Source: Octopus sinensis (Eukaryota). Taken from it: 64,000 nt of DNA. The translations under genes were made by a program, and so were the position numbers. This document shows positions 39,694 through 41,373 of the stretch, in pieces (positions within the stretch are counted from its first letter, which is position 1; each line of letters opens with the position of its first letter). The notes under the pieces were generated by a model, which saw only the letters and a list, made by a program, of their open reading frames with translations, searched no databases and was not told where the DNA came from. Where the stretch lies: positions 24,924,001-24,988,000 of the forward strand of contig NC_043010.1 in the NCBI RefSeq assembly GCF_006345805.1. Reading direction: 5' to 3'.

Positions 39694-41373
39694 TTAGTGA
39701 GACTCAATAGAGTCGATTCCCTTTATTTTATTGTGGGCGGTCCCACACTGTCTCAGCCAATTCCCTAAACTTGCGTTAAAAAACGAATTTCTAAAAGAGT
39801 AAAAAAAATTCTACCTTAGTAGAGGGGATCTAAAATTAACAGCAAGGCGGGCGCTTCTTCGATGGGCAGAAGAAGCAAAATGTCAAATCCGGGTTTAAAT
39901 TTATTTTATTTTCAGTTCCTATCGAGGCACGGCCCCCAAACCTTGCCACCTCCTCAAAAACAAAATAAAATAAAAGTTTTGAGGGGCATCCTGCACACCA
40001 ACCTCTCGGTCCTCGAAAAAAAAAAGAAAAAAAATTTTGAGGACTTCATCGAGGGGGTTTTATGTGCAGGATGCGATAGGAACTCTCAGGGTCAAATTCA
40101 GTATATGAGCCATTGGAATTACCTGCAGTGTAAATGGCTCTATACAACTGCAGGGAACGTTGATAACGGCCCAACGTGGTTGGGCAACACGCTCTTAACC
40201 CACAAGCCACCATCTTATACGGCTCCTGGCAACCGTGTGTTTCATACCTTATAGTTTAAGGATTTGGACTTCGCGGCATTTTCCAAGAGTACGTGGAAGA
40301 AAATCAAGAGTACAAGAGTAAGGAATCAAGCCCTGCAGACCGTAAGCCAACATCCTTCATAGCCAACCGAAATCCGCACACTAAGCCAAGTACCCTGCAA
40401 CAGTCCGCGAAGGGCTCAATACTGACGGTTTACCCGTCAGTTGATTGGCTCCCGAAGTGAGGCCAAAAGTGAGTCCACTCATGCAATAAATTTTGTGAGC
40501 CACAACAATCTGGCGTCAGGAGACAGCAATCGAGAGCCACCCAGGGACAGCAGCCTTCACGAGGCGCTAACTTGTGGGCGAGATAAGAGGCAGGATGGAA
40601 GCACCCCATCCCCACCTCGCCCTGTCAGCAGCCCAAACCGGACAGCGAACCCAGCCGTTCTGACCTTAACCGTCCGTGGGCGCCACCCCGTAAAATTCTA
40701 TATAGAAATGGGGGGCCTTCACACAACACCGAAGCCAGGTAGTGGCCGATCCGGATGAGCAGGAGGCCGACAAGCGCAGCCACGACCAACCAACAGGGTA
40801 TCATCCCACTCTGTAAACGAAAATCTTCCACACTGCTTGGTCCCCACCAAATAATTGGAACCGCTATGGGGAAAAGACACATTTAGTTTGTCCGCGGACG
40901 GGTTGGCGCCCGCAAAAGCCAATAATGGCTTGCGTCCCCCCCCCCCCCGCAGACGTAAGCTCTTAAACCACGACAAGGTAGTGTCCCCGTGGGTGAAGCC
41001 TGGCAGTGCATCCATCTCCCGGGTGAAACCCGGCAGATCATAACATACCAGACAAACTTGATGGTGCATCCACCCTCTCGCCTCGCTGCCAATGTTCCAA
41101 TCGGACACCGCAGGTGTGTATCCCCCTATACACCAACCACACCGGTGTTCCTATAGGACACCGCAGGTGCCCCCAACCGACTGAACCTTTCTGCCCCCAA
41201 CGAAACTCGGTGGGGTGGGGACAAATCGTATCAAATCGGCTATTCAATAAAGTTCACCCCAAGTGGATGAGCAGTAGGAACAACCACCCATGGCAAGGTT
41301 CGTGGGTCATAACCATCAAGCCCCACTTAAGAGAACCTTTCTGCCCCCAACGAAACTCGGCCCCACTTAAGAG
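39694..41373 (-). mobile_element. Putative non-autonomous R2-dependent element (SIDE-like), non-coding
   Basis: Has a 5' HDV-like fold homologous to the R2 5' end and a 3' motif matching the R2 3' terminus at 30 of 36 positions. It has 28S-derived flanks and no recognisable ORF. Confidence 0.7.
40873..41373 (-). ncRNA. HDV-like self-cleaving ribozyme (predicted)
   Basis: P1 CUCUUAA/UUAAGAG, P2 GGGACAC/GUGUCUU, P3 ACC/GGU, L3 UUGUCGU, P4 UCUGCGG/CCGCGGA and J4/2 CUAA occur in the correct nested double-pseudoknot order. Confidence 0.65.

What the first reader, a model, noticed from the sequence alone, without database searches (positions are those of the whole stretch)
40873..41373. Complete HDV-like ribozyme fold with an atypical L3 and P1.1
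On the minus strand the elements fall in HDV order. P1 5' CUCUUAA is at 41,373-41,367 and duplicated at 41,333-41,327, followed by a ~340-380 nt J1/2. Then come P2 5' GGGGACACU (40,988-40,980), P3 ACC, L3 UUGUCGU, P3' GGU, P1' UUAAGAG (40,966-40,960) and C (40,959). P4 is UCUGCGG/CCGCGGA, J4/2 is CUAA (40,886-40,883), and P2' is AUGUGUCUUU. L3 has G where HDV has C, and the base after P1' is C where HDV has G, so P1.1 would be a swapped single G-C pair. The R2 copy has the same UUGUCGY and C. P1 5' is the 28S sequence at -9 to -3 from the R2 site, and R2 ribozymes cleaving inside upstream 28S are established. A C-G pair at position 1 is unusual.
Basis: partly seen in the sequence, partly recalled or inferred. 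Interest (0 to 1): 0.8.

Follow-up and report, generated by a model that had tools for sequence, protein, structure and literature searches.

The report
R2-type self-cleaving ribozyme in spacer element
The sequence does fold into the self-cleaving HDV-like RNA that R2 jumping genes use to cut themselves out of ribosomal RNA transcripts; it sits at the front of a short non-coding R2-derived element and is a slightly unusual new example of a well-known kind.

Summary
My relaxed HDV-like descriptor hits only this site in the window. It gave 0.03 core hits per shuffled window, none with a P1 partner. It gave no complete hit in 248 kb of unrelated DNA.

Four further observations support a real ribozyme:
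- The nested P2/P3/P4 fold is the unconstrained minimum-energy structure of 40988-40873.
- The 378-nt J1/2 folds as a closed domain, and its terminal helix GUGGG/CCCAC abuts P1 and P2.
- R2 copy A shares CTTGTCGYGG-N8-CTTAC, but its P1' pairs with 28S -11..-5 rather than -9..-3.
- The inner 28S-derived repeat at the 5' junction starts at the predicted cleavage site, -9.

The host is a roughly 1.67-kb element with no ORF and an R2-like 3' end. It lies in a diverged 28S-like fragment of the spacer. Copy A is truncated inside L3.

Upstream-28S cleavage, J1/2 loops over 700 nt and non-canonical P1.1 pairs are all published. The swapped G:C P1.1 pair and the C at +1 are the only unusual points. Catalysis is untested. 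I rate it a new member of a known kind, of modest interest.

The parts
41367..41373 (-). P1 5' strand CUCUUAA, matching 28S positions -9..-3, in a diverged 28S-like flank. Predicted cleavage is 5' of C41373.
   Evidence: for the sequence. One search finds it as the P1 partner of 40966-40960. The duplex has 7 Watson-Crick pairs (RNAduplex draws 6, -5.2 kcal/mol).
41327..41333 (-). Second, internal copy of the P1 5' strand. It is part of a repeated 14-mer, CTCTTAAGTGGGGC.
   Evidence: The 28S-derived stretch of the inner copy begins at -9, or at -10.
41333..41360 (-). 28-nt copy of the internal segment 41210-41183, sitting between the two junction 14-mers. It reads as a template-jump or duplication footprint at the RNA 5' end.
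   Evidence: 100% identity over 28 nt.
40989..41366 (-). J1/2 peripheral domain, 378 nt (338 nt counted from the inner P1). Its first 5 nt, GUGGG (41366-41362, or 41326-41322), pair with its last 5 nt, CCCAC (40993-40989). This is a P1.2-like closing helix.
   Evidence: both MFE and centroid close the domain with this helix, z = -2.95; the duplex is -6.8 kcal/mol.
40980..40988 (-). P2 5' strand, GGGGACAC(U).
40967..40979 (-). P3 ACC, L3 UUGUCGU, P3' GGU. G40974 is the proposed P1.1 partner of C40959.
   Evidence: the motif is shared with copy A; P3 is in the MFE.
40959..40966 (-). P1' UUAAGAG followed by C40959, the P1.1 partner. U40958 could form a U:U pair with U40975.
   Evidence: left unpaired in the nested MFE. 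PMC13635239 gives the U:U precedent.
40890..40954 (-). P4: GUCUGCGG (40954-40947) pairs with CCGCGGAC (40897-40890). The distal part is long and structured and contains a 15-G run.
   Evidence: -13.1 kcal/mol for the basal 8 bp.
40883..40889 (-). J4/2: AAA then CUAA. The candidate catalytic C is C40886. The alternative is C40890 of CAAA.
   Evidence: In one search, copy A's GGA-CUAA aligns to B's GGA-CAAA.
40873..40882 (-). P2 3' strand, A(U)GUGUCUUU.
39693..41365 (-). Element B: about 1.67 kb, no ORF, non-autonomous and R2-derived. It carries the ribozyme at its 5' end and an R2-like 3' end (GTGTGGGACCGCCCACAATAAA...AGGGAA...AAG).
   Evidence: (no coding or nucleotide similarity to copy A except the last ~45 nt).
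41366..41494 (-). Diverged 28S-like flank upstream of B. A piece resembling 28S +37..+115 (41494-41419) is followed by a piece resembling 28S -55..-2 (41420-41366).
39618..39692 (-). Diverged 28S-like flank downstream of B, resembling 28S from about +37 on. It is paralogous to 41494-41419.
47978..48004 (-). 5' junction of R2 copy A: 28S CUCUCUU (48004-47998), L3 UUGUCGC (47999-47993), GGC, P1' AAGAGAG (47989-47983), C47982, UUAC. This is the homologous ribozyme core, but it lacks P3 5', P2 5' and J1/2.
   Evidence: no complete fold found in copy A.

Best explanation
This is a genuine R2-type HDV-like self-cleaving ribozyme. It forms the 5' end of a non-autonomous, roughly 1.67-kb R2-derived element (element B) that sits in a 28S-like pseudo-target in the rDNA spacer.

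Inferred mechanism, based on what is established for R2:
1. The element is co-transcribed with flanking rDNA.
2. P1' (UUAAGAG) pairs with the 28S-type sequence at -9..-3.
3. The large J1/2 folds on itself, and its closing helix brings P1 next to P2.
4. P2, P3 and P4, plus a minimal P1.1 (G40974:C40959, possibly with a U:U pair), build the double pseudoknot.
5. A J4/2 cytosine, most likely C40886, acts as general acid, and the RNA is cut 5' of C(-9).
6. The released RNA keeps 8-9 nt of 28S at its 5' end. These can anneal the cDNA to the target during retrotransposition.
7. The R2-like 3' end lets the element use the R2 protein in trans.

Shown: the fold, its statistical rarity, its shared core with the R2 copy, the register-shifted P1', and the junction footprint.
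Inferred: transcription, catalysis, and mobilisation in trans.
For: 1. All helices are intact at the stated positions. P1 has 7 of 7 Watson-Crick pairs. P2 has 8 bp, P3 3 bp and P4 8 bp.
2. This is the only descriptor hit in the window. Shuffles gave 0.03 core hits per window and 0 of 150 with P1. There was no complete hit in 248 kb of unrelated DNA.
3. The unconstrained MFE of 40988-40873 is exactly P2 + P3/L3 + unpaired P1' + P4, at -52.7 kcal/mol.
4. The J1/2 MFE and centroid both close with GUGGG/CCCAC directly abutting P1 and P2, z = -2.95. This matches the 'pinch' domain that activates large HDV-like ribozymes (PMC4908430).
5. Copy A and element B are otherwise unalignable, yet both carry CTTGTCGYGG-N8-CTTAC. 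In both, the seven nt after GGY are perfectly complementary to 28S just upstream of the R2 site, in registers 2 nt apart: -11..-5 and -9..-3. The chance of this is about 30/4^7 per element.
6. The 5' junction carries a second CTCTTAAG-TGGGGC. Its 28S part starts at the predicted cleavage site and is separated from the first by a 28-nt copy of an internal segment. PMC3774820 uses this kind of junction duplication as evidence for upstream cleavage, and PMC3414825 describes the template jumps.
7. The invariant L3 U, C and G, and the J4/2 C and A, are all present.
8. The R2-like 3' end is shared with copy A.
Against: - No Rfam HDV-like model matches, even with E up to 10 on the core alone. This is expected, because P1 lies 380 nt away.
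- The standard descriptor is violated at three places: C instead of G at +1, a reversed and single Watson-Crick P1.1 pair, and U at the second J4/2 position (PMC6326823).
- Three or four extra nucleotides separate P4 from the proposed catalytic C.
- P2 has three G.U pairs, and a competing GGGG/CCCC pairing exists.
- Only one complete copy is available, so there is no true covariation test.
- The flanking 28S-like pieces are 10-20% diverged, so this copy may be old.
- No relatives were found in public collections.
Confidence: 0.75

Rival explanations
1. Fossil ribozyme. The fold is inherited from an active R2 ribozyme, but this copy, or this whole lineage, no longer cleaves efficiently.
For: - The element lies in decayed 28S-like fragments in the spacer.
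- It sits next to a rearranged rDNA unit and a broken R2 copy.
- It has C+1 instead of G, and a weak P1.1.
- It has extra A residues before the J4/2 C.
- Three G.U pairs in P2 could be C-to-U decay.
- PMC3774820 reports R2 folds that look correct yet show no cleavage in vitro (sow bug and horseshoe crab).
Against: - None of the 31 base pairs in P1, P1.2, P2, P3 and P4 is broken.
- All invariant L3 and J4/2 nucleotides are kept.
- C+1 and the G...C pair are shared by the independently evolving copy A, so they are lineage traits and not damage.
- Fast natural HDV-like ribozymes have weak P1.1 helices (PMC13635239).
Confidence: 0.2
2. The ribozyme is real, but with a different active-site assignment. 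Either C40890 (of CAAA, directly after P4) is the catalytic residue, or P2' is AGUGU (40834-40830) after CCAA (40840-40837).
For: - MAFFT aligns copy A's GGA-CUAA with element B's GGA-CAAA.
- The flexible search also returns the CCAA/AGUGU alternative, with 5 Watson-Crick pairs to ACACU.
Against: - C40890 pairs with G40954 to extend P4.
- With CAAA as J4/2, six unpaired nt would separate it from P2'.
- The CCAA alternative gives a shorter P2 and is not in the MFE.
Confidence: 0.12
3. Chance resemblance: a GC-rich structured 5' region that merely fits a permissive template.
For: - The descriptor was written after the fact.
- HDV-like templates are permissive: with any 7-nt L3 and no P1.1 requirement the window gives 54 core hits.
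- There is no Rfam hit.
Against: - With the L3 U..UCG signature there is one hit, against 0.03 expected.
- It lies at the 5' end of an element with an R2 3' end.
- Its P1 partner is the 28S junction itself.
- The core is conserved in the R2 copy with a register-shifted P1'.
- The J1/2 closing helix and the junction footprint are independent coincidences that chance would also have to explain.
Confidence: 0.04

Closest known systems
R2 retrotransposon 5' HDV-like ribozymes that cleave in upstream 28S (Eickbush, Burke and Eickbush 2013, PMC3774820)
   Same: - Position at the 28S/element 5' junction.
- The P1 5' strand is supplied by 28S; cleavage 9-36 nt upstream is reported.
- Very long J1/2: 216-498 nt in silkmoths and over 700 nt in honeybee.
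- 28S duplications at 5' junctions whose length matches the cleavage site.
- Conserved L3 U, C and G, and J4/2 C and A.
   Different: - P1.1 is a single Watson-Crick pair with purine in L3 (G:C) instead of C:G.
- +1 is C.
- Three extra A residues lie between P4 and the J4/2 C.
- The host element is non-coding and sits in a 28S-like fragment of the spacer, not in a 28S gene.
- I could not see the paper's figures, so I cannot say whether any listed R2 has the same L3.
R2 SIDEs, the short internally deleted non-autonomous R2 elements of Drosophila (PMC3414825)
   Same: - Built from a 5' R2 ribozyme plus an R2 3' end.
- No ORF.
- Presumed to use R2 protein in trans.
- Template-jump footprints at 5' ends.
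   Different: - Element B has about 1.1 kb of interior with no detectable similarity to the resident R2 copy. Derivation by simple internal deletion of that R2 is therefore not shown.
- Only the last ~45 nt resemble copy A's 3' end, at 77% identity.
- The host organism is unknown and evidently not Drosophila.
Large HDV-like ribozymes with a structured J1/2 (P1.2) peripheral domain, e.g. the mosquito drz-Agam-2 family (PMC4908430)
   Same: A helix closing the J1/2 insert directly between P1 and P2.
   Different: The domain here is 378 nt, far larger, and its effect on activity is untested.
HDV-like ribozymes with non-canonical P1.1: L1TcRz with a single pair (PMC3185411); C. briggsae and Ackermannviridae ribozymes with U:A plus C:U or U:U (PMC13635239)
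   Same: A P1.1 reduced to one Watson-Crick pair, possibly stacked on a U:U pair.
   Different: The Watson-Crick pair here is G (in L3) with C (in J1/4). I found no description of that polarity in the papers I read.

Membership tests
HDV-like self-cleaving ribozyme (nested double pseudoknot) | P1 of about 7 bp whose 5' end is the cleavage site, with P1' immediately 3' of P3' | tested here: met
   CUCUUAA (41373-41367) pairs with UUAAGAG (40966-40960): 7 Watson-Crick pairs, directly after GGU.
HDV-like self-cleaving ribozyme (nested double pseudoknot) | P2 of at least 5 bp enclosing P3, P1' and P4, with a 3-bp P3 closing a ~7-nt L3 | tested here: met
   GGGGACAC/GUGUCUUU and ACC/GGU with a 7-nt L3. 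This is the unconstrained MFE of 40988-40873.
HDV-like self-cleaving ribozyme (nested double pseudoknot) | Conserved L3 nucleotides: U at the first position and C-G at positions 5-6 (U19, C23, G24 in the PMC6326823 descriptor) | tested here: met
   L3 is U-U-G-U-C-G-U. The same holds in copy A.
HDV-like self-cleaving ribozyme (nested double pseudoknot) | P1.1 pseudoknot between L3 positions 2-3 and the nucleotides after P1' (canonically two C:G pairs) | tested here: inconclusive
   One Watson-Crick pair is possible, G40974:C40959, in reversed polarity, plus U40975/U40958. Single-pair and U:U-containing P1.1 helices are known to be active (PMC3185411, PMC13635239). The G:C polarity is untested.
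HDV-like self-cleaving ribozyme (nested double pseudoknot) | J4/2 with a catalytic C followed by N-R-A, leading into P2' | tested here: met
   CUAA at 40886-40883, then A(U)GUGUCUUU. Three extra A residues precede it, and C40890 is an alternative.
HDV-like self-cleaving ribozyme (nested double pseudoknot) | G at +1 paired with U or C (G1-Y35 in the published descriptor) | tested here: not met
   +1 is C41373, paired with G40960. Copy A also implies C at +1 (-11).
HDV-like self-cleaving ribozyme (nested double pseudoknot) | Match to a curated covariance model (Rfam HDV, CPEB3 or drz families) | tested here: not met
   No hit at E up to 1 on 34 kb, nor at E up to 10 on 171 nt. These models do not accommodate a 380-nt J1/2.
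HDV-like self-cleaving ribozyme (nested double pseudoknot) | Site-specific, Mg2+-dependent self-cleavage that depends on the J4/2 C | not testable with these tools
   Needs a transcription and cleavage assay.
R2 5' ribozyme | Lies at the 5' end of an R2 element, at its junction with 28S sequence at the R2 site | tested here: met
   The junction is ...GGGAGTAACTTCGACTACTCTTAAG|TGGGGC. The element has an R2-type 3' end. The 28S sequence is a diverged spacer copy.
R2 5' ribozyme | P1 pairs with upstream 28S or the element's 5' end, with a P1-P1' distance within the known range (23 to over 700 nt) | tested here: met
   P1 is at -9..-3. The distance from the end of the P1 5' strand to the start of P1' is 400 nt for the outer copy and 360 nt for the inner copy. 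The range comes from PMC3774820.
R2 SIDE (non-autonomous R2) | 5' R2 ribozyme joined to an R2 3' end, with no ORF | tested here: met
   The longest open frame is 143 aa with no RT similarity. The ribozyme is as described above. The 3' end is 77% identical to copy A over 43 nt.
R2 SIDE (non-autonomous R2) | Derived by internal deletion of a full-length R2 of the same genome | tested here: inconclusive
   The interior has no similarity to copy A. A different parent R2 lineage cannot be excluded.

The most novel reading that the evidence does not exclude
A natural HDV-like ribozyme lineage, seen in two diverged R2-type elements in one genome, is catalytically active with three departures from the standard descriptor. 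It has a reversed-polarity single G:C P1.1 pair, possibly stacked on U:U. It has a C-G pair at the cleavage site instead of G-U or G-C. It uses registers -9 and -11 of 28S. If so, the standard descriptors used for genome-wide searches systematically miss a class of retrotransposon ribozymes.
Probability: 0.45. Interest if true: 0.45.

Novelty: new member of a known kind. Interest (0 to 1): 0.3.

Why it matters
If it is active, it widens the sequence space known to support HDV-type catalysis: purine in L3 for P1.1, and C at +1. It also shows that the usual search descriptors, which fix G1 and a CC/GG P1.1, would not find such ribozymes.

It adds a probable non-autonomous R2 derivative outside Drosophila. 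It also gives a tidy single-locus illustration of three published ideas:
- register shifts of P1' along 28S;
- junction duplications that mark the cleavage site;
- a J1/2 'pinch' helix.

Otherwise it confirms existing knowledge rather than changing it.

Tried and rejected
- **Rfam.** I ran the gathering threshold on the whole window, E up to 1 on 34 kb, and E up to 10 on the 171-nt core. No HDV-like family matched. This is not informative, because P1 is 380 nt away.
- **Metagenome scan.** The shared core pattern CTTGTCGYGGNNNNNGAGCTTAC gave 33 loci, roughly the number I estimated for chance from a rough guess of the collection's size. None carried a 28S junction motif next to the match (two hold an isolated GACTCTCTT), only 7 could form P3, and by eye they read like bacterial coding sequence.
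- **Protein searches with both R2 ORFs.** The nearest relatives are only 27-37% identical, so no close copies are available for covariation. The window's own R2 ORF is not on record.
- **L001.** This relative lacks the 5' end.
- **L002.** I could not fold its 5' end convincingly.
- **L036.** It has a canonical core, so the G:C P1.1 is not general among relatives.
- **Identifying the organism.** I tried an accession search in the literature and a search with another RT fragment. Neither gave a named hit.
- **Copy A with a complete ribozyme built from 28S sequence.** Rejected. The same UU would have to be both P1 and L3, no P3 or P2 partner exists upstream, and the flexible search finds nothing.
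- **Element B as a coding element.** Rejected.
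Full report
**Setting**

The minus strand of the window carries rDNA.
- Rfam finds a complete 18S at 50718-48575 and the 3' third of 28S at 43338-41947, with short 28S pieces at 43466-43341.
- Between them lies an R2 element, copy A, at 47997-43451. It has zinc-finger and RT ORFs that are interrupted.
- Copy A is inserted at the canonical site: ...GGGAGTAACTATGACTCTCTT|GTCGCGG... 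at the 5' side and ...AACCG|GTAGCCAAATGCC at the 3' side.
- Only about 165 nt of 28S precede copy A. 5.8S and the 5' two-thirds of 28S are missing, so this rDNA unit is rearranged.
- The finding lies further downstream, in the spacer, about 570 nt past the 28S 3' end.

**The observation**

- P1 5' CUCUUAA is at 41373-41367 and again at 41333-41327.
- P2 5' GGGGACACU is at 40988-40980.
- P3 ACC, L3 UUGUCGU and P3' GGU span 40979-40967.
- P1' UUAAGAG is at 40966-40960, followed by C40959.
- P4 is GUCUGCGG/CCGCGGAC, 8 bp.
- CUAA is at 40886-40883.
- P2' is at 40882-40873.

Minor corrections:
- P2 is eight contiguous pairs, three of them G.U. A ninth pair needs a bulged U.
- Three A residues separate P4 from CUAA.
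- The '28S' that supplies P1 is a diverged 28S-like fragment of the spacer.

**Is it more than chance?**

I wrote an HDV-like descriptor that keeps the L3 signature U..UCG. and allows a Watson-Crick P1.1 of either polarity.
- It returns exactly one hit on both strands of the window, at this site, with both P1 copies.
- Block-wise dinucleotide shuffles give 0.03 core hits per window, and none of 150 has a P1 partner.
- Unrelated real DNA (248 kb) gives one core hit and none with P1.
- The descriptor is post hoc, but several independent observations point the same way.

Independent support:
1. The unconstrained minimum-energy fold of 40988-40873 is exactly the nested part of the model: P2, P3 with a 7-nt loop, P1' left single-stranded, and P4. 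Its energy is -52.7 kcal/mol.
2. The 378-nt J1/2 folds as a closed domain in both the MFE and the centroid. Its first five nucleotides, GUGGG, pair with its last five, CCCAC. That helix directly abuts P1 and P2 (z = -2.95). This is the arrangement shown to activate large HDV-like ribozymes by pinching P1 and P2 together (PMC4908430).
3. The comparison with R2 copy A is informative.
   - The two elements are otherwise unalignable.
   - Both contain CTTGTCGYGG-N8-CTTAC, each once, and the motif occurs nowhere else in the window.
   - In both, the seven nucleotides after GGY are perfectly complementary to 28S just upstream of the R2 site, but in registers 2 nt apart. AAGAGAG pairs with -11..-5 in copy A, and UUAAGAG pairs with -9..-3 in element B.
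   - This is the P1' drift along 28S that Eickbush et al. proposed (PMC3774820).
   - By chance it would occur about 30/4^7 times per element.
4. The 5' junction reads 28S-like CTCTTAAG-TGGGGC, then a 28-nt exact copy of an internal segment (41210-41183), then CTCTTAAG-TGGGGC again.
   - The 28S-derived part of the inner copy begins at -9, the predicted cleavage site, with a one-base overlap (C) to the copied segment.
   - Junction duplications whose length matches the cleavage site, and template jumps at R2 5' ends, are both documented (PMC3774820, PMC3414825).

**What carries it**

- Element B runs from about 41365 to 39693. It has no ORF longer than 143 aa and no protein or nucleotide similarity to copy A, except in the ribozyme core and the last ~45 nt.
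- That 3' end, GTGTGGGACCRCCCACARTAAA...AGGGAA...AAG, occurs only at the 3' ends of copy A and element B.
- B is therefore best described as a non-autonomous R2 derivative of the SIDE type: a 5' ribozyme plus an R2 3' end (PMC3414825). Its descent from copy A by simple deletion is not shown.
- It is flanked by 28S-like pieces. Upstream is a +37..+115-like piece followed by a -55..-2-like piece. Downstream is another +37-onward piece.
- The two downstream-type pieces share derived substitutions and the same 5' boundary. The context is therefore an old, duplicated pseudo-target next to 140-bp spacer repeats.

**Copy A's ribozyme is not complete**

Copy A's 5' junction lies inside L3. The 28S CUCUCUU that would be P1 overlaps the UU of L3. 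There is no P3 5' strand, no P2 5' strand and no J1/2, and the flexible search finds no fold. With its broken ORF, copy A is a dead, 5'-truncated copy.

**How atypical is it?**

- Relative to a published descriptor (G1-Y35; C20-G37 and C21-G36; U19, C23, G24; C-R-R-A; PMC6326823), this RNA has C at +1, U and G at positions 20 and 21, C and U at positions 36 and 37, and U at the second J4/2 position.
- The invariant L3 U, C and G, and the J4/2 C and A, are present.
- R2 ribozymes are known to be flexible in these regions (PMC3774820).
- An active retrotransposon ribozyme with a single-pair P1.1 is known (PMC3185411).
- Crystal structures of fast natural HDV-like ribozymes show P1.1 made of U:A plus C:U or U:U (PMC13635239). 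The G:C plus U/U arrangement here is therefore a modest extension.
- A relative's contig, L036 (27% protein identity), has a compact canonical core with CC/GG P1.1 and CUAA. The swapped pair is thus a trait of this genome's lineages, not of R2 in general.
- Long J1/2 loops (216-498 nt in silkmoths, over 700 nt in honeybee) and cleavage 9-36 nt upstream in 28S are already published (PMC3774820).

**Weak points**

- No Rfam model matches.
- There is only one complete copy, so no real covariation test is possible.
- No close relatives exist in the searchable collections.
- The catalytic C is ambiguous between C40886 and C40890, and an alternative P2' exists.
- A competing GGGG/CCCC pairing appears when more 3' sequence is included.
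- The pseudo-target is decayed, so this copy may be a fossil.
- Catalysis is untested.

**Verdict**

- This is an R2-type HDV-like ribozyme with its P1 in 28S-type sequence at -9..-3, belonging to a non-coding R2 derivative.
- It is a new member of a known kind, with a few unusual core nucleotides worth a bench test. Interest is modest.

Noticed in passing
window 48575-47998 and 43466-41947 (minus strand): The rDNA unit is rearranged. 18S is followed by about 415 nt of spacer-like sequence and then directly by 28S from about 165 nt upstream of the R2 site. 5.8S and the 5' two-thirds of 28S are absent. Both rRNAs score low for their length, so the sequence is divergent or degenerate.
   Followed up: partly
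window 47997-43451 (minus strand): R2 copy A is degenerate. There is an in-frame stop at 45877-45875. The C-terminal (presumably endonuclease) part continues in another frame after 44475. The 5' junction lies inside ribozyme L3, and 28S -4..-1 is deleted.
   Followed up: partly
L036 1-440 (NCBI GCA_031546965.1, JAVBJR010001188.1): A distant R2 relative has a compact, canonical HDV-like core at 382-438: P2 ACCGC/GCGGT extendable to 9 bp, L3 TCCACGT, CC/GG P1.1, and CTAA. Its only P1 partner is GGAATC at 3-8, about 156 nt upstream of the R2 site, inside a 28S-like leader that is itself diverged from the conserved 28S sequence. That is far beyond the published -36.
   Followed up: partly
window 30814-30884 (+): Hammerhead HH9-like motif at 33 bits, below the gathering score of 52. 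Helices and GAAAC are present, but the CUGAUGAG box reads UUGACGAG. It is probably a decayed hammerhead of a retroelement.
   Followed up: partly
window 30625-30774 (both strands): A roughly 150-nt near-perfect hairpin that hits the Rfam WsnRNA46 model on both strands, below threshold. It looks like a palindromic repeat or MITE, not that sRNA.
   Followed up: no
window 41494-41419 and 39692-39618 (minus strand): Two 28S-derived pieces flank element B. They share derived substitutions, an AAGG-type insertion and the same 5' boundary at about +37 of the R2 site. They are therefore paralogous spacer copies, not independent decay of one target.
   Followed up: partly
window 38581-39627 and 36633-38153: A 140-bp spacer repeat with 7.5 copies at 98% identity is followed by about 1.5 kb of CA/TG-rich low-complexity sequence. 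That sequence produces the spurious mir-297-type Rfam hits seen elsewhere in the window.
   Followed up: no
window 20902-26351 (+): Fragments of an APE-type non-LTR retrotransposon (RVT_1, Exo_endo_phos, zf-RVT) are split over several frames. The RT fragment has over 1,000 homologues in unnamed assemblies.
   Followed up: partly
window 40949-40935 (minus strand): An uninterrupted run of 15 G lies in the 5' arm of P4. It is a possible assembly or slippage hotspot, or a G-quadruplex former.
   Followed up: no
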